DNA of 64,000 bases, taken from contig OZ287758.1 of NCBI GenBank assembly GCA_965649765.1, forward strand, positions 36,022,001 through 36,086,000, in the 5' to 3' direction. The notes under the pieces are model-generated. The model made no database searches. It saw only the letters and a list, made by a program, of their open reading frames with translations, and was not told where the DNA came from. The first letter of the stretch is position 1; the number at the start of each line of letters is the position of its first letter. The DNA comes from Bispira polyomma. Lineage: Eukaryota. Of the stretch, positions 2,019 through 64,000 are shown in pieces. Both the position numbers and the translations under genes were made by a program.

Positions 2019-3279
2019 ATGGGATCAAAACACCACAATATACGAAGCAGCACATGGGAGAGGTGTTCAAAGTGCGAAACTAGCCACAGACCACCCATAG
2101 GGGACGCTTGTGAGAGAGCGACGACAGCGCACACATTATCTTCAGCTGGATCTGAGGTGCAAGGTCAGATGCAGACAGAAAAGACAGCCGCGCAACAGCA
2201 GGTAGCAGGGGGTTCACAACAAGTCAAGTTTAACTCAACAGTGGGCGACGAAACACACTCTCAAATGCAGTCGAATTCTAAGAAAGGGAAATCACAGGGT
2301 AAGAAGCGTGTGGTTAATGTAGACGTTTTGGCCAAGCTTGATTTAGTGCTAGATAAAGTCACACAATTGGAAGATAGATTTAGTCGACAGGAAGAAAGGA
2401 ATAACAGTGCATTGTCTATTTCATCGCGTCCGTCGGCACACAGCTCGCCCAAGGCTCATAGATCCACTCGTGTACGCACAGACGACCACTGTGAAAGCAG
2501 CCAAATTACCCACACTGGACTTCTTGAGGGGTGACTCAGTGATCCAGGATGAGGTGGACCGCAGGATTAGACAGTACCAAGAAACATCGAGGGAGGACAT
2601 TTCAGGTATTGTGATTAATAAAAAGTCAATTAAATCAGGCAGACTTAGAGTCGGAGATCAAAAAGTTAAGGTGACTGTGGCATGGCCACATGAGAACTGT
2701 ATTTTAAACGAACAAATGAAAATGCCGACTTACAAGGAACTTACTATGTGCCAGTGGGTTCAAGGGTTTTCTAAATGCGTACTTCAGGAAACTGAAGAAG
2801 AAATTAGGAAAAACATGTTACAGTACCAATACGTTCTTATGCAGGACGCCATGGATCTTTCATGGCCAACTGCTAAATGGGCCCATGCAGCGGTTTTAAC
2901 CGAAATTGAGAGGGGTAACCTAAGTTGGGATAACCCAGGGGACGTTGATAGAGTAAGGCAGCGTTTCACTCAAAGAGTCCTTAAAAGTTCAGACTCAGGT
3001 GGTTACAGTTCACAAACAACATATTACAACGGCCAAAGTAGAGACAAAGATCAGTCAATTCAGGGGAAAGTAACAGTTTGTCAAAAGTATGCGAAAGGCA
3101 TATGCAAATTTGAATCAGATCATTTTGAAGGGGGGAAAATGCAGAAGCATTCTTGTGGTTTTTGCTACAAGGTGGTGCATAAGAACTTTGACCACCCAGA
3201 GAATAAATGTAACCGTAAATTAAAGGAAGGGAATGGAAAAAACCACAGCAGTGGTGACAGGGCTGAACAGAGAGTTTAG
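2019..3279 (+). pseudogene. gag: Gag-like protein of the YR retrotransposon (one frameshift near 2480-2495)
   Basis: ORF 2019-2534 has an N-terminal CxxC-x3-H...C knuckle and a coiled coil. It continues in ORF 2407-3279, which ends in a Cys/His finger (CQKYAKGIC...H...HSCGFC...HPENKC) of the kind seen in Ngaro-type Gag. Confidence 0.8.
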
Positions 3280-5840
3280 CAACAGTGACGTCACTCCCAG
3301 TTCCAATAACATTTCTAGACAAGAAACATGTTTAGAACAAAAAACACATGGGTCAGTAACCAGGTTACAACAAAGTCTTTCTGGGGTAGTAAGCACCTTC
3401 AGATATGTAATTGTTTTTGGTGTACAAAAAGTTCACAATATAGTCTTACCAAAAGAAAAGGAACTGGGGGGGGGGGGGGGAGGAAAAACCCCCTCTCGTG
3501 CTAAGAGAAGCACAACATTGGGCCACTGAGAGTGAAGGTCATATTAAAATGAACAGTGTGCCTATCACACAACAAAGTTTAATTAGTATAGGCAATAGCC
3601 AAGTTAGTAGTGTCCATATTACAGATGTTAAGGATAATAGTGTCACTTTGGTTAGCACGTATCAGTAATGCCAGTATAGCGAGATTGATAGTAGTAGTAA
3701 CTACACATGTTACACGCCACAGGGAGAGCAAAGTTTAACAGGTGAAAGTTATGTCAATGACGAGTTGACAATGAGGCAAAATATTACGTTTGTCACATGT
3801 ATAGGGGGAACACCCCACTTAGAGAGTTTCATTAGTCATGCTAGCTCTGAAAGGTTAAGTTTAATCACAACAACAAATGCAGCAATGGAGTACACATTTG
3901 ATACCACAGCCAGTCATTCTTTTAATGTAAATAGGGACATACAGTAGGGACAATTTGGCTGGGATATCAACACCTGCCAATTAGAACATTCAAGGGCGGG
4001 ACACAGGTCAAGCTATTGTTCTTATATAGAAGGGGAAGGCATAAGCCACAACAGTGGGGGCAAATGGAAAGAATGGCTAAGGGGCTTTATTCTAATAGAC
4101 CTCCCCCTAGTGAGGCAAATTACAATCAAAACACAAGCACTCGAGCTACAGTCTAGTGATATGGTACAGTGGGTTAGTGAAGCACACAACATAACAAAAC
4201 AAACTGGCCTTCCAAATTACAAAGGGGCTAGACTCCCCGTGCCTTCACAATTAAATATCACAGCCTGGCGTACATACTTAAAAGAATATGACTTGGCTGT
4301 GGTCTGTGATTACCTCCAGTATGGTTTTCCGTTGTCATTAGACTATACTCAATTCGAATACAACACAAATGTGGAAAATCACCCCTCAGCATTAAGATTC
4401 CCCAAGGAAGTTAGTGAATACTTTGCTACAGAGGTAGGCCATAAGGCTATGGTGGGCCCAATGCAAAAAAGTCCTTTCCAACAATTACATGTTTCACCCT
4501 TAATGTCAAGGTCTAAGCCGAATGGAACAAGGTGGATAATTGTAGACCTTTCGTGGCCACATGGTAATAGTGTAAATTCATGTATTCCCCGTAATACTTT
4601 TGATGATATAGAATTCCAACTCAAATATCCCACAATAGATAACATAGTACAAAAAATAGCCTTGCTAGGGCCTCAATGTTTATTATATAAAATTGATTTG
4701 CAACGAGCATATAGAAACCTGAGGACAGACCCTTTTGACTATTCAGTTTTAGGATTAAGTTGGAATAAGGAACTGTACGTTGACGTCAGTGTTCCCTTTG
4801 GCCTGGCCTCGGGCGCATGTGCGTGCCAAATGGCCACCGACGAAGTAACCTACCTCATGCATAGTTATAATTACTGGGTTTGTTCGTATCTGGATGATTG
4901 CATCGGAGTTACGCCTCCTGGAAAGGCTAACCTAGCTTTCGTTACATTGCGCAATCTGATAGAGAAATTAGGGCTCCCTATAAACCAAGACAAGGTAGAC
5001 CCCCCAACAGAAGAGCTTACATGCTTAGGCATTAGCATAAACGCGCGAACAGGGCGGCTCACAATACCAGAAAAGAAATTGCTAGAGGTTAAACAATTAT
5101 GCCTTCAATGGAAAACAAAATGCATAGGCACACGGAGGGGCCTGCAACAATTGTTAGGAAAACTATTTATACATAGATGTGTCAAACCGGCAAGGCTTTT
5201 TGTGAATAGAATTTTGGGTGTGTTGGGGAGAACCCCCTCCCCCCCTCCCCCCCCCCCTCCCCCCCCCCCTCCCCCATACGACAATACCCCTAGGCGAAGG
5301 CTTTCATAAAGACGTTAATTGGTTTTGCGAGTTTTTGCAAGATTACAATGGGGTCACTGAAATGCATCAGATGGAGGGTAATATTAAGGAAGTGTATATT
5401 GACACGTCACTTAATGGTTTGGGGGCCTACTGGGGAGGACATGTTTATACAGTAGACATCCCTGATTACTATAAGGACACGCTAATAATAGTTCACTTTG
5501 AAATGGTAAACGTCATAGTCGCTTTTCATATGTGGGGGAAAGAATGGGCCAACACAAAAGTGTGTGTTCACTGTGACAACTTAGCAGTTGTCCATATACT
5601 TAACAGGTTCAAATGCAGAGATGTCTTTTTAAATGCATGTGCCAGGACGTTATGGCTTTTGCAGGAAAAATGTAACGTTGAAATTAGAATCATATTAGAG
5701 GCGTGAAGAACACCTATGCAGATATCTTGTCCAGATGGCCTTATTATGAGAACACAGACAAAGCTGAAGTTAAATATTTAAAAACGTGTACTTGGCATGA
5801 AGTAAAACCAGCATGGCTGAACCCTAACTATGATATTTAA
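3233..5840 (+). pseudogene. pol: Pol: reverse transcriptase + RNase H (disrupted)
   Basis: RT motifs YGFPL, NHPSA, IVDLS, KIDLQRAYR, PFG and YLDD in ORF 4110-5309. RNase H motifs YIDTS, HFEM and HCDN in 5218-5706, then HIRGVKNTYADILSRW after a frameshift, ending at TAA 5838-5840. Disruptions: frameshifts at the G-run 3466-3480, the C-run 5233-5275 and ~5685; in-frame stops at 3666-3668 and 3945-3947. Confidence 0.9.
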
Positions 5841-5850
5841 ATATTGTAGG
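5824..5850 (+). promoter_or_regulatory. Putative branch point and 3' splice site feeding the YR frame
   Basis: CTAAC at 5824-5828, then AT-rich ...tttaaatattgtag|G with AG at 5848-5849, 9 nt after the RNase H stop. Confidence 0.6.
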
Positions 5851-6903
5851 TCATCCACTTATACAGGGATTACTTCGAGATGTGAATGCACGGGTGGCCT
5901 CAGGATTTCGGCCTCGCACCTCAGCGGCTTACCAAGGGAAATTCAGGCTCTATTTAGCATTCCTAGCACACCTAAGGATAAGCTCTCCCTCTGAGTTAAA
6001 ATCTATACTATTATTTTTAGAGTTTTTAGCACAACAAGGTTACAAAGCAGGTACACTCCTGGGATACACCTCAGTGCTTAAGCATTTTTTCCAGTTATAT
6101 AACTTGCCCACAGTAGCACTACAACACAAAAAAGTAGCACTCGTGCTGAAATCGGTTTCACACAATGCTCCGCTGACATACAAGATAAAAGGGGTCTTCC
6201 CACCAGCTAAGCTACAACAGTTGATAGAGTTAGCTCAAGGGTTTCCAGGGGCTCACCACTACAAGACAATTATATTACTGGGGTTTTTCGGCTTCTTCAG
6301 GTTAGCCACATTAGTTTCACCCACAGCAGCAAAATTTCAGGCATCCCAGTTTCCTACACAAAACGACGTAATTTTGGGGGCCCCAGGGGCACATATAATA
6401 ACAAAATGTGCTAAGAATATGCAGGTCTCGGGTCACCTGCAGGTGGTGCAAGTCCCAGCGCTGACAAGATCCCCACTATGCCCAGTTAAGGCATTGCTCC
6501 ATATTGTACCTGAAAAAACCTCAAAGTGCATATCACTATTCCAGTTTGAACAACAATGGCGTAACACTATAATAACAGCATATCAGGTGCGCAAGGTCCT
6601 CGCCTCGCTGGTACAAAAATTAACCTTCCCCCTGCTGAGTTTGGATTTCACGCTTTGCGATGCTCAGGAGCGTCATGGGCATTCGACCACAATGTAGACC
6701 TCCAGCACATAAAGGTACACGGCGGCTGGCGCTCTGACGCCATTTGGAGATACTTAGTCAAAACACCCAAAGCAGCAGGGTCGGTAGCCACAACCTTCAC
6801 AAAGCACCTAAATAACGAAAAATCAGACATACCCACTACAACAATTTGGGTTTGGCCTTTTTTAACTTTTACATACATATACATACATAACATTTACAAG
6901 TAG
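5850..6903 (+). pseudogene. Tyrosine recombinase (YR/integrase), one frameshift near 6620; no upstream ATG in frame
   Basis: Catalytic motifs FFGFFR (R), then after the frameshift FGFHALRCSGA (HxxR) and HGGWRSDAIWRY (W...Y). The frame is open from 5834 with no ATG before the domain start. Confidence 0.9.
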
Positions 6904-58238: not shown

Positions 58239-58473
58239 TTAGAAGTGATATACAAGTGTCACAGAGAGCAGAGAGTAAGACATACTTGCTGCCATCACCG
58301 CAGTGGCTCCAGCCTGGGAGTTGGCTTGACTACCTGAGTTATCATCATCTATGTCTGCAGCAGTGGGAGCTGGTGTACACGGTTCTGCCTTCCGCCACCA
58401 ATTGTCGTACAGGGCCTGAACAGTACCATTGTCCAGGAGTATCTCAATGGCTTGGCTGAATTCTTCTGTGTAT
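58239..58473 (-). CDS. iGluR-LBD protein terminal exon: end of S2, spacer and GPI-signal-like tail
   Basis: cctgtag| on -, phase 2; YTEEFSQAIEILLDNGTVQALYDNWWRKAEPC-TPAPTAADIDDDNSGSQANSQAGA-TAVMAASMSYSLLSVTLVYHF*. Confidence 0.88.
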
Positions 58474-59981
58474 CTACAGGATAGAAAAAAGTTTATACCA
58501 AGATCATATTATATAGGCCACGTTTCTCAAAACAAGCCCATATTTTTTCCATAGAATGGCCATATTCTGTATAAATTCCTCCAAAAAAATTGCTATTTTA
58601 TTGAATGTTGATGTTTTGTATGTAAACACACCTTATACATATATCATACTTATTTCTCCAAGAGTCTTCCTAGCCTACTTATGAGACTAAAGTTGACAGT
58701 GATTACAAAGTACAGTATTATTGGAATCAAAAATTGACTATTAAGTAGATCAAGGGTGATTGCATAAGGCGGATAAACTCTTGACTTCATCAATGCATTG
58801 GATATGCCCATTTACTCTCGAATTTTGTTCAAAATTCACGTTAAGGCTGTAGTCAATCAACAGCCCTCGTACCTTGCTTCCCTTCTCTCCTTCAGTAGCA
58901 GTAAGAGAGGCAACAGACTTCGGTCAGACCCATCAGGAAGGCAGGATCCAGAGCTTTCTCTATTGCAGCTGCCTTGTTATGGAACAGTCTCCCAGTTGAC
59001 TTCAGATCAGTTGATTCACTCATCAGTTTTACGAAAAAGCTTAAAACCTATCTTTTTAACCTTGCCTACCCACCTTAGCTTTCCTCATGCATGCTCCCAC
59101 ATGTTTTCTTATGACTTTGCTATGCCCATGAACTTTACGATTGGATCAATGATTCTGCTGTTGAGCTTTAGAAGATACCTAGCATCAATAAAGCACGTTA
59201 AAAATTCATAATAATAATATTTGGCTTTCCACTATAGAGGTCTTGGGGCAAGAATTGTAGCCATCATGTAATAAAACCAAGACTAACTAGGTATCTGAGT
59301 TAGCTGGAAAATTAACTTCTGTTAGAAAAAAAGACAATGGTCAAGAATGCATAATGAAAGGTTTATATACCACTTAAGACTATTCTATGACAGAAGACTC
59401 TCGTCTATGTGTTGGTGTTTCTGGTATTAAACCTTAAGCATGCATGGTTTTATTATTTTTGACTACTTTCTTTGGAGTACTTACTTGTATTGCACCTTAA
59501 TTATATGTCATTACATCTTAATTAAATCTTACACTAGATTTTAGAAGCGGCTTTTTTCAAGCACTAATAACCAGTAAGACTCTTTAATCCCTACCTGCTG
59601 CCCTTCTCCAGAGCTATGGAGTAGTTTTTGTAGTTCATGAAGGTAAATGTCATGAGGTCACAGTTCTGTACTGCCAGATACTCCAGGGTGTCACTACCAC
59701 CAATAAAGGCATAGTCATCAGTCAGGACCTTCTCCAAACCTAGAGGAAAAGTTTGAGTTTGAATAGAATTTAGTTAGGTTTTACGTCGCTTTCGACAGCT
59801 TAGGTCATATCATGGTCAGGTTTAACAGTGGAAGAAACCACTGCTGAAGCACTGTAAACCAGCAACCTATGGCAAGAACCTGACAAACTTTCCCACATAA
59901 AGCAACTAACAAGATTTGAACCCACATTGGTGCTTTTAACCGCATATATGTCCACTGTTCCTGGGGCCAGAGTGGCCTTGC

Positions 59982-60029
<48 letters not shown>

Positions 60030-63000
60030 TGTATTGTAGCCTATGATCAGTTAAATGTTCATGTGACTCATACACTGCAATTGATGTTCTTTGTCGTTAT
60101 AATGAGTGTACCTACTCCAAGTTAAGACACCTTTACTGATGCCATAAATATGGCCTTTATATACCGTTGATTGCATTACACAGCAGGGGGCGACACGACA
60201 TATCACAACAGTATTATTCACATCAAACATTACATAACAATACCTAATCTATATCAAATATAACGATTTTTATCTCAAAAGATGTGCTACATATTACATA
60301 TGGGGTAAAATAACGGCAATGTTTCTTTAAAACATTATCCAGTTTAATGTCTGTGTCATGGTGTAATCTAACTGCCAATTAAAGAATAAGCACAAGTCAC
60401 ATATGCTCATATGTTATCCTTAGATTAATAAACGAGATATGATTCGAACAGAATAGTTTTGTATTATAAGTACCAAATATAACCATTGCTCAAGATCCGT
60501 TATCAAAATCATGGGTAAGTGACACCAAATATAAATGTGATTTATATCTAAACAGCAAAGCTCATCATAGGAAGAAAAGGGTAATACTTGAATACAGAGG
60601 TTTTATAGGTAAGAACAATGCACACTAAAATTAAAATTGTCTATCAAACCAATGGCATCAAGGAAATTGTCCCAATGTATTTTAGCCCCACCCTTCACAG
60701 AATCCTGTATTCGGCTGTGGGTAATTTCCGTTCTATTACACTCACCTTGACTGGTTGTGGCAACCAACACGAACGGCCCCTGTGTGGTCATGTATTTATC
60801 CATTCTTCTCAGAAGTGGTTTCTTACTGTTGGCGATTACCTTCCTCAGCACATGTGACTTGTCATAGCTCCCATAATTTACCTAGATTGCAAAAATACAT
60901 TGTGGTAACAGTAAACATATTGAATAGTGGTGCATGGCATATCCAGTTTAGCACTAAAAAAAATTGATATCGAAATGTGGACCTCATAAATATGATCAAT
61001 ATTTCAAAATCGATGTATGATGCCATAATGGGATATATCTCAGTTTATAACGTGTCATGTGATGTAGCCTAAACCAATGAAATGGTTAGATACTGAGGTG
61101 TCGTAAGTAAACTTTTGACATGAAGTTATAGAGTAACAGATGGTAACATGAAGTACCAAACAATGTTATTATTATTTTTAAAGTATATATCAGCCTCTAA
61201 GATGGTCCATTCTCTGAAAGGGATAGTCCTACAACATAGGCAATGGTGTGTTCACATCTTGTCCAAGGATTTTATCCCACCAAATAGACCTTGCCGCATT
61301 AGTACGAGTCAAAGCTGAGACCTTCTGATCAACAGACAAACTCTCTCAACTGGGAGTCAGACTGGGAGCCGAACATATAACATACATTGTAAACAACATT
61401 ACTTTGAGAAGCAGGTACTTGCCCCTCAAAAATGTAGCAATACCACTATATGGAGAAGCCTACTTTGTATACCTTTGTACTGTCCATGAGTTCTTCAATA
61501 CTAGATATGTTCAGCTCCTTCCGCACCAGAACTGCCATTGAAATCTGTAGGAAGGGTATAGTAAAGTCCACAGCCTCCTCTCGTCTATTGGTCACGGCTA
61601 GCGGTGCCATGGCAGCATCCGCTTTCTGTAAATAAAAGAAAAAATACTGTTAGTGACGCCATGGCTGCATCCGCTTTCTGTAAATAAATAAAAAACACTT
61701 TTTTTAAAATATCTCTTAGGCATCTCTTGGTGTACCATCAAAGGATGCACTTTCGGTAGAATATGAAGACAATTTGTGTCAAATCTTTTGGTCACTGCTA
61801 GTTTATCATGGCACCTTTTTTTGGAAAATTAAAAAGGCGGATTGTGTTATATGTCTTGGTCGTATGTCATGGCAGCATCCATGTTCTGTAGTTTGAAAAG
61901 ACAATTTTGGAAATATCCCTTCGTCACTGCTAGGGGTGCTATCGCAGCTTCCGCTTTCTGGAGATTAAAAATGGAAAGTTTGTGTCATATGCCTTGGACA
62001 CTGTTTGCGGCTAATGGCTTCATCCCCTTTCTCTGTATTAAAAAGACATTGAAGTTATTGAAACATTGCTTTATCAAAAATCGAGATATTAAAGAAAATG
62101 GCGAGAGAACTCAGACAAAGTTATGGCTTAAAAATGAATTATTATTTTATGATCATCCCTGATATTGGGAAAGAAAAATTACCAATACGGCTGACAATGT
62201 CACAGGTTTGAAAGAATAAAGCATATTGCAGTACCGAAATGACCTGTTTCAATGGGCCTTTGGTTCAGTAACACTGACTACCTTCCCTTGTATTGCCTGA
62301 ATTACAACTTACCCCAGTAAAGACTTCCCCTATCATTCCAGACCAGCTACCATTTTCATACAGTCTACCATACATGTTGTCCCTCACTGGCTGGAATCTG
62401 CAAAGTAGCACAGTATTGATCTGAAGCATTAGTAGAAGCCCAATTTATTTAATATTTGTTCTTATCCAGTAATTCCTCGAGAAGAGATGGTCTGGAATTT
62501 ATTATTGCTTTAAACAACAAATAACCACTTGTTTCAAATGGGCAAATTCAAATATATAATTTTTGGCCAGCCACCGGAGTAATTATTATTATAATCAGAC
62601 TTTTTGTTTATTTTTGACAATATCAAATTCCTAGGCCCAAGATTAAATGATAATTAGAATCTAAAAATCATAATTGGTGAACGAAAAAAAGATAAACAGC
62701 AATGGAGGAAATGTATCGGTAAACAAATATGTTTTTAATCAGAGATGGAAGGAATGCAAAGCAGGAGTTGTCCTGATCAAATTAGGTAAACTATTCAACA
62801 GGATCCATATTTAAAGTACAGATTCAAATACGTTGGCAGTCTTAAATGCACAATGTAGATTGAAAGGTTTACGACATGTTGGTTGATGCCTGGTGGTGCT
62901 GGGATGTGTAATTTGAAAATCCAGTCAAACTCGAGTCCAGCTGAGACTAATTGTATTGTATTATATGTTTTCAACATGTTTTATTAATTCACATAATTTT

Positions 63001-63417
63001 CTAAAGCGTAACAACCAAAATCAATGAAACAATAATTTCTGGATCATCATCAGTAGGCAATGGCGTGTTCACATCTTGCCACATCACGTTTCCCCATGAA
63101 TGAACCTACCAGCATCAGCAGGAGTTGAACCATTCACCAGACATACTTCTTTATCAGATGAGACCACGAGAGACCACAAAAATTTTGTCTGGGTTCGTAA
63201 ATCTGAGTGTACACCACTCTAGCACAGAAAATATATTTATAAACCTTTTTATTTCCCATCTATGTGCATCTATGTAAATGCATCTTATTATTTCTTACAT
63301 GTACTTGTCATACGGTTGTTCCATCACATTGTTCATTTCCTCCCACAGCTCTACCATGAACCCAGTAAACCGGAACAATCCGGTTGGGGATTGCTCTAAC
63401 ATCACGAAAGGCTCAAT
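58239..63417 (-). CDS. Pore-less iGluR-derived ligand-binding-domain protein (S1 fused to S2) with GPI-anchor-like C-terminus; 6 exons visible, 5' end outside the window
   Basis: Six GT-AG exons join in phase (873 nt; 290 aa + stop) with no internal stop. iGluR LBD motifs: EPFVM, F.GF.VEL, D.MYG, WSGMIGEV, KADAAMAPL..T..REEAVDFT.PF, ISSIEEL, V.YG, YAFI, NCDL, YSIAL.KGS, WW....C. No M1-M3 and no SYTANLAAF. Confidence 0.88.
58790..59218 (+). mobile_element. L2/CR1-group LINE 3' fragment
   Basis: HW.MPIYSRILFKIHV...PSYL remnant, family 3' UTR and (AAT)n tail; explains ORF 58798-59211. Confidence 0.8.
59595..59739 (-). CDS. iGluR-LBD protein exon (S2) GLEKVLTDDYAFIGGS...NCDL...YSIALEKGS
   Basis: ttcctctag| ... 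|gtaggg on -, 145 nt, phase 1/2. Confidence 0.9.
59750..59980 (-). mobile_element. SINE family A (sense to the iGluR-like gene), tail ending ~10 bp before an acceptor
   Basis: Reverse complement of the family sequence (gctgtcgaaagcgacgtaaaacctaactaaattc). Confidence 0.78.
59983..60027. repeat. (GT)n microsatellite
   Basis: Direct reading. Confidence 0.95.
60746..60881 (-). CDS. iGluR-LBD protein exon (S2) VNYGSYDKSHV...LVATTSQ
   Basis: caatctag| ... |gtgagt on -, 136 nt, phase 0/1. Aligns to the S2 segment IAYGT...SK...KMW.YM...FV.TT.EG. Confidence 0.88.
61473..61625 (-). CDS. iGluR-LBD protein exon spanning the S1-S2 junction: KADAAMAPL...VLVRK-ELN-ISSIEELMDSTK
   Basis: tttacag| ... aag|gtatac on -, 153 nt, phase 0/0. 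Confidence 0.88.
61590..62045 (-). repeat. Degenerate tandem array of the acceptor and 5' end of exon 61473-61625
   Basis: gccatggcagcatccgctttctgtaaataa (61606-61635) recurs at ~61658, with weaker copies at ~61735, 61800, 61866, 61937 and 62010. Confidence 0.82.
62313..62397 (-). CDS. iGluR-LBD protein exon (S1) FQPVRDNMYG...WSGMIGEVFTG
   Basis: tttgcag| ... |gtaagt on -, 85 nt, phase 2/0. Confidence 0.92.
63299..63417 (-). CDS. iGluR-LBD protein exon (S1) IEPFVML...PYDKY
   Basis: ctgtttcag| ... |gtaaga on -, 119 nt, phase 0/2. Confidence 0.88.
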
Positions 63418-63840
63418 CTGAAACAGAAACACCCACCATAAACCAATAAACTGAAACAATCTGGTTGGAGATTGCTCAAACATCCCAAAAGGCTCACTCG
63501 GAAACACATTTACTGTGTGATTAAAACACATTGCACTTTATTGCTATATCGATTGCACTCTTATCCAGTCAGATTTTTTTTTGGCTTTTGGTGGTTTGGA
63601 ATTACCAGGTTATTTCCGGGCTTTCTGAAAATAAGCCCATGCAATTATATATTTGAAAATTCACTATGCCTCAAATATCCCACAGGCTTAGATTTGGTTT
63701 AAAAAAGATTGCTCGCACATAACTGTACTTAATCTTTATCTAGAGAGTTTTCTCATTTACTTATCATTTTTTTCATTCCTATACACGTGCACAACTAATG
63801 TCCACCGTTGACTTTTAAAGCTGATAAAATGTTTCAATTT

Positions 63841-64000
63841 TACTGCCAAAGGTAAACGTGGGTTACTGCTAAATGTAAGTATGGGTCACTGCCAAATGGA
63901 AGTATGGGTCACTGCTAAATGTAAGTATAGGTCACTGCTTAATGTAAGTGTGGATCACTGCTAAATGTAAGTATAGGTCACTGTTAAATGTAAGTGTGGG
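63841..64000. repeat. Minisatellite, 23-bp unit (tgggtcactgctaaatgtaagta), about 7 copies, runs off the window
   Basis: actgc recurs at 63842, 63865, 63888 and onward. Confidence 0.92.

What the first reader, a model, noticed from the sequence alone, without database searches (positions are those of the whole stretch)
61473..61625. S1 and S2 fused within a single exon through a 3-residue linker that creates an N-glycosylation sequon
Seen: the exon reads ...VDFTIPFLQISMAVLVRK-ELN-ISSIEELMDSTK, with the junction at ~61506-61520. VDFT.PF...I.VL.RK is the end of S1 and I.S.EEL is the start of S2. No intron lies between them, so the pore cannot be hidden in skipped exons. The linker forms an N-I-S sequon exactly where pre-M1/M1/M2/M3 would be. 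This mirrors the short linker of engineered S1S2 constructs and the continuous topology of bacterial periplasmic binding proteins. However, the W.GMIGE motif, the WW....C disulfide and spliceosomal introns point to an animal iGluR origin, not bacterial transfer (inference).
Basis: partly seen in the sequence, partly recalled or inferred. Interest (0 to 1): 0.85.

Follow-up and report, generated by a model that had tools for sequence, protein, structure and literature searches.

The report
Natural pore-less glutamate-receptor binding domain
This worm gene keeps only the ligand-gripping clamshell of a glutamate receptor, with its two halves joined directly and the ion channel gone; it is an intact member of a conserved annelid family for which I found no description.

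Summary
Confirmed. The exon at 61473-61625 (minus strand) joins the end of iGluR S1 to the start of S2 and aligns without gaps to engineered S1-GT-S2 constructs. Short-read contigs from two samples span the junction unchanged. An ortholog in another organism has the same six exons (70% identity, dN/dS about 0.14). A relative's spliced transcript also lacks a pore. The gene encodes a probable signal peptide, one clamshell domain and a GPI-type tail; no pore or N-terminal-domain exon lies nearby. Trees place it in a clade of pore-less proteins inside animal iGluRs, not with bacterial binding proteins (AU p 0.02-0.04). Corrections: the linker is two residues, and the junction sequon is incidental (absent from the ortholog, 1 of 19 members). 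The carboxylate-binding arginine is kept in 19 of 19 members. This gene has lost the glutamate-contact residues E705 and S654/T655, and the family has lost dimer-interface residues. Most likely it is a lipid-anchored, monomeric binder of a small carboxylate. Ligand, anchor and expression of this gene are untested. No paper found. The scan noted this family before on other DNA of this genome (s1-616381).

The parts
63299..63417 (-). Coding exon, first part of S1 (phase 0 in, 2 out). Its acceptor intron position is shared with full-length iGluRs.
   Evidence: (66% identical in ortholog)
62313..62397 (-). Coding exon, middle of S1 with Y450 equivalent and the W-x-G-M-I-G-E motif (phase 2 in, 0 out). 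Its donor intron position is shared with full-length iGluRs.
   Evidence: (86%)
61473..61625 (-). Junction exon: end of S1 (P478 and R485 equivalents, R at 61583-61581), 2-residue linker, start of S2
   Evidence: (73%)
61512..61517 (-). Two-residue linker E-L in place of pre-M1, M1, M2 and M3
   Evidence: ungapped alignment to S1-GT-S2
61503..61511 (-). N-I-S sequon at the junction; not conserved, judged incidental
60746..60881 (-). Coding exon, S2 lobe; S654/T655 equivalents replaced by hydrophobic residues
   Evidence: (60%)
59595..59739 (-). Coding exon, S2; E705 equivalent is G, C718 and Y732 equivalents kept
   Evidence: (79%)
58239..58473 (-). Last coding exon: helices J and K, W-W then second cysteine, small-residue spacer, hydrophobic C-terminal tail and stop (GPI-type signal, inferred)
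   Evidence: (45%)

Best explanation
An AMPA/kainate-like iGluR gene lost its N-terminal domain and the M1-M3 pore segment in an annelid ancestor or earlier, leaving S1 joined in frame to S2. The product (about 334 residues) is sent into the secretory pathway by a signal peptide, folds as one two-lobed clamshell with its disulfide, and is tied to the outer cell surface by a GPI anchor. It works as a monomeric, non-conducting binding protein: the kept arginine grips a carboxylate and the lobes close. It most likely captures, buffers or presents a small extracellular acid. For this gene the ligand is probably not glutamate, because E705 and S654/T655 are lost in both orthologs. Shown: gene structure, fusion, absence of pore, conservation, ancestry, fold of a family member. 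Inferred: signal peptide exon, GPI anchor, monomer, ligand class, buffering role.
For: Open frame across six exons with canonical splice sites. Same exons and intron phases in an ortholog; dN 0.19, dS 1.33. Junction spanned by short-read contigs. No pore or N-terminal-domain match in the window plus 40 kb upstream, with a positive control. Spliced transcript of a relative runs from signal peptide to hydrophobic tail with no pore. Leech member folds as a clamshell, pLDDT 94, TM up to 0.93 to GluA2 S1S2. 14 of 15 tails examined end in a hydrophobic stretch, most within 12 residues of the stop. R485 kept 19/19; dimer-interface E486 1/19, L751 2/21, E755 4/21, against 11/11, 11/11, 10/11 in channels. 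Fused clade 96/98 with junction columns removed, inside animal iGluRs 100/99.
Against: No RNA run holds this gene. The two 5' exons lie outside the window, were picked by splice and hydrophobicity scoring, and were not found in 14 kb upstream of the ortholog. No GPI predictor was available, and this gene's tail is only moderately hydrophobic (1.4-1.5 Kyte-Doolittle). No binding data exist. Some members keep a full glutamate set (L036, P0047), so the family is not uniform.
Confidence: 0.55

Rival explanations
1. Trans-acting partner of a channel: the anchored clamshell docks on full-length iGluRs or ionotropic receptors (IRs) and passes on ligand or tunes gating, as a chemosensory co-receptor or modulator.
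For: The genome holds many full-length iGluRs and a cluster of single-exon IR-like genes. A diversified pocket with a fixed arginine resembles acid-sensing IRs (own knowledge). Several paralogs exist.
Against: The back-to-back dimer surface that channel LBDs use is eroded across the family. No expression data link them.
Confidence: 0.2
2. Released, soluble ligand sink in the manner of acetylcholine-binding protein: secreted or shed into synaptic cleft, mucus or body fluid.
For: Same logic as AChBP, a binding domain freed from its channel, which also occurs in molluscs and annelids (PMC3423370 abstract; own knowledge). One member, P0037, has no hydrophobic tail in its called sequence.
Against: Nearly all members keep a C-terminal hydrophobic signal, which a purely secreted protein does not need. 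Shedding from a GPI anchor remains possible.
Confidence: 0.13
3. Ligand-independent surface protein (adhesion or scaffold) that reuses the fold.
For: Most polar pocket residues are lost. Delta receptors show that iGluR-derived proteins can act structurally (PMC10084454).
Against: R485 is invariant in 19 of 19 members while surface residues vary freely.
Confidence: 0.09
4. Assembly collapse, decaying pseudogene, or gene transferred from bacteria.
For: The junction has the same spacing as bacterial family-3 binding proteins. No RNA for this gene.
Against: Short-read contigs span the junction. The ortholog is under purifying selection. Two S1 intron positions are shared with animal channels. AU tests reject grouping with bacterial proteins (p 0.044 and 0.019).
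Confidence: 0.03

Closest known systems
AMPA/kainate iGluR ligand-binding domain and engineered S1S2 constructs (GluA2 S1S2J, GluK2, GluK3)
   Same: Fold, S1 and S2 motifs, disulfide, R485, two intron positions; junction length identical to the G-T linker.
   Different: Natural gene. No N-terminal domain, pore or M4 with cytoplasmic tail. Pocket and dimer interface changed.
Acetylcholine-binding protein (AChBP)
   Same: A ligand-binding domain freed from its ion channel in lophotrochozoans; works-like analogy.
   Different: Unrelated Cys-loop fold; pentameric and soluble. This one is probably monomeric and lipid-anchored.
Kainate-binding proteins (KBP) and variant ionotropic receptors (IRs)
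   Same: iGluR derivatives without a full N-terminal domain; IRs have diverged pockets.
   Different: Both keep M1-M4 and the pore.
Bacterial family-3 solute-binding proteins (GlnH, HisJ type)
   Same: Continuous clamshell, same junction spacing, membrane tethering by lipid in many bacteria (own knowledge).
   Different: Separate lineage in the tree; the resemblance is a return to the ancestral topology.

Membership tests
Ionotropic glutamate receptor (channel subunit) | S1 and S2 ligand-binding segments | tested here: met
Ionotropic glutamate receptor (channel subunit) | M1-M2-M3 pore with SYTANLAAF motif between S1 and S2 | tested here: not met
   S1 and S2 in one exon; no PF00060 or tblastn match nearby
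Ionotropic glutamate receptor (channel subunit) | M4 followed by a cytoplasmic tail | tested here: not met
   Hydrophobic stretch ends at or near the stop; only weak likeness to M4
Ionotropic glutamate receptor (channel subunit) | N-terminal domain | tested here: not met
   No match in 40 kb upstream with one query; transcript of a relative has none
iGluR superfamily by descent | Nests among animal iGluR ligand-binding domains; shared introns | tested here: met
   NMDA, epsilon and IR references were missing, so the parent class is not fixed
Glutamate-binding site (GluA2 numbering from own knowledge) | R485, T/A480, S654, T655, E/D705 | tested here: not met
   R485 and A480 kept; 654/655 hydrophobic (register uncertain by one residue); 705 is G in both orthologs
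GPI-anchored protein | Signal peptide, small-residue omega site, spacer, terminal hydrophobic stretch | tested here: inconclusive
   Pattern present by inspection and hydropathy; no predictor or experiment
Bacterial family-3 solute-binding protein | Groups with prokaryotic binding proteins; no spliceosomal introns | tested here: not met
AChBP-like soluble ligand sink | Released from glia or tissue and binds transmitter | not testable with these tools
   Needs expression and binding data

The most novel reading that the evidence does not exclude
Annelids have an undescribed family of natural, GPI-anchored iGluR ligand-binding domains. The family is a glutamate-receptor counterpart of AChBP that arose by deletion of the pore and diversified into binders of different small acids, some still able to bind glutamate, and it shapes transmitter or chemosensory signals without a channel.
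Probability: 0.5. Interest if true: 0.85.

Novelty: new variant of a known kind. Interest (0 to 1): 0.7.

Why it matters
Isolated iGluR binding domains are known to me only as laboratory constructs. A conserved natural family shows that the module can be freed from the channel and put to other use, as AChBP was for nicotinic receptors. The two main iGluR surveys removed such sequences by design: PMC6307864 dropped those without the SYTANLAAF motif and PMC12226733 dropped those with 0-1 transmembrane helices. The proteins should be easy to express and screen, so ligand and role are directly testable.

Tried and rejected
Assembly collapse: rejected. Bacterial transfer: rejected. Pore exons reachable by alternative splicing: none found in the window or 40 kb upstream. 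Functional sequon at the junction: rejected as chance (background 0.9 sequons per 100 residues). Delta-class origin, suggested by C-terminal likeness: not supported, the clade sat with AMPA/kainate-like rows. Ortholog 5' exons: not found in 14 kb. RNA for this gene: no run on record. Ten paper searches found no description; the library lacks most subscription journals. The joined protein was built only inside scripts for frame checks, pairwise alignment and trees and was never sent to a search or fold tool, so the fold shown is that of the leech homolog P0022. One careful tree run was killed for time and replaced by a quick tree.

Full report
OBSERVATION. The window is part of a 1.04 Gb animal assembly. 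It covers the end of Pfam Lig_chan-Glu_bd. It aligns over its whole length without gaps to engineered kainate-receptor S1-GT-S2 constructs. E-L lies on the artificial G-T and N lies on the proline that begins S2, so the linker is two residues. The N-I-S sequon is present at 61511-61503.

NOT AN ARTEFACT. Contigs assembled from three short-read DNA runs (two samples, one study) cover 61254 to 63045 or beyond with no difference and no gap, at the same depth as neighbouring unique DNA. These may include the source sample. Independent support comes from a contig of another organism (L015, ENA ERZ22147071) that carries all six exons in order, with the same intron phases and the same junction length. 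Over 244 codons the two proteins are 70% identical, with dN 0.19 and dS 1.33, which indicates purifying selection.

GENE MODEL. Six exons in the window (63417-63299, 62397-62313, 61625-61473, 60881-60746, 59739-59595, 58473-58239) splice into an open frame of 290 residues ending in a stop. Beyond the window, a 59-nt exon at about 65410-65352 supplies the first strand of S1, and a candidate signal-peptide exon ends near 70115 (extended coordinates). The same layout, a signal exon, a phase 1 intron, a short exon and a phase 0 intron, is seen in relative L037. These two exons were not confirmed in the ortholog. No pore or N-terminal-domain sequence is detectable in the window or 40 kb upstream, while the same pore queries find a real channel gene easily. 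After the W-W motif and second cysteine come a small-residue spacer, a hydrophobic stretch and the stop. This is the pattern of a GPI signal; it is clearer in the ortholog than here.

FAMILY. The genome holds at least five more genes with S1 and S2 in one exon and a hydrophobic tail (L016-L020). Named relatives come from Helobdella, Paralvinella, Lamellibrachia and Owenia, all annelids. An ESM Atlas cluster of 147 members lists no pore family and has Annelida as its commonest phylum. Several other hits come from samples I could not assign to a taxon, so the range outside annelids is open. P0041 lies on a 1558-nt Logan contig that matches five exons of genomic locus L037 end to end with the introns removed (76-87% identity). 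It is therefore a spliced transcript of a relative, running from signal peptide through fused clamshell to hydrophobic tail with no pore. No RNA run was on record for the window's own gene. Linkers vary from two residues, as here, to about 15. The leech gene has an intron at the junction.

ORIGIN. Two intron positions in S1 are shared with most of the genome's full-length iGluRs that I modelled; the other four in the window match none of them. In maximum-likelihood trees the 15 fused proteins form one clade (98/98; 96/98 with the junction columns removed) inside animal iGluRs (99/99; 100/99), next to AMPA/kainate-like rows (86/97; 91/89). Grouping them with bacterial binding proteins is rejected, though not strongly (AU p 0.044 and 0.019). 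Adding two long branches (Owenia, P0047) lowers support for a single origin to 72 in a quick tree. NMDA, epsilon and IR references were missing, so the parent class is provisional. The match in junction spacing to bacterial proteins is best read as a return to the ancestral topology.

SEQUON. The ortholog has G in place of the junction N. Only 1 of 19 junctions examined has a sequon there, about what the background rate of 0.9 per 100 residues gives. The other three sequons of the protein are conserved in the ortholog. The junction sequon may be used, but nothing marks it as important.

STRUCTURE AND POCKET. The leech member was modelled at pLDDT 94 and matches GluA2 and kainate S1S2 structures with TM about 0.82-0.93. 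Positions were read off the alignment with GluA2 numbering from my own knowledge. R485 is kept in 19 of 19 members, and P478, C718 and Y/F732 are kept wherever covered. In this gene and its ortholog 705 is G and 654/655 are hydrophobic, so the glutamate contacts on the second lobe are gone. A large subgroup has P at 705, while L036 and P0047 keep a full glutamate set. Residues of the back-to-back dimer surface are kept in channels (E486 11/11, L751 11/11, E755 10/11) and mostly lost in the family (1/19, 2/21, 4/21), which points to a monomer.

MECHANISM. The most likely reading (0.55) is a GPI-anchored, monomeric clamshell that binds a small carboxylate other than glutamate and buffers or presents it at the cell surface. 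Rivals are a partner of a channel (0.2), a shed or secreted sink like AChBP (0.13), a ligand-free scaffold (0.09), and artefact or transfer (0.03). The architecture itself is much surer than the role, about 0.9.

KNOWN OR NEW. It fails the membership test for an iGluR channel subunit but descends from one. Ten literature searches found no description; the library is incomplete. Two surveys excluded pore-less sequences by their filters (PMC6307864, PMC12226733). An earlier agent of this scan reported the same family from the paralog at C11:16.7 Mb (s1-616381). I treated that as a lead and tested its claims here.

LIMITS. The spliced model was searched exon by exon; the joined protein was not sent to any search or fold tool.

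Noticed in passing
window 2019-6697 +: Overlapping ORFs with reverse transcriptase and tyrosine-recombinase matches, the layout of a DIRS-like retrotransposon.
   Followed up: partly
window 61627-61700 and 63353-63506: The acceptors of two exons are tandemly duplicated just upstream (52-nt and 81-nt units). Use of the 52-nt upstream copy would shift the frame.
   Followed up: partly
G000 C11:26.76-26.80 Mb and C10:36.12 Mb: Two more S1 matches with no pore match nearby; probably further pore-less members, not fetched.
   Followed up: no
G000 C6:12.29-12.80 Mb: Cluster of about ten single-exon IR-like genes with open frames near 690 residues, some broken.
   Followed up: no
L021-L024 (G000 C1:99.52-99.62 Mb): Tandem cluster of four full-length iGluR-type channels; the fourth appears damaged.
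   Followed up: partly
L044/L045, P0047: Full-length pore-less member on short intron-free contigs from an organism I could not identify; it keeps the complete glutamate-binding set and has a long branch, so it may come from outside annelids.
   Followed up: partly
ESM Atlas: Clusters of binding-protein-like sequences with weak iGluR S1 matches in giant viruses (Nucleocytoviricota); scores under 0.9, a lead only.
   Followed up: no
window 63842-64000 and beyond: A 23/46-nt tandem array runs across the window end inside the intron upstream of the first in-window exon.
   Followed up: no
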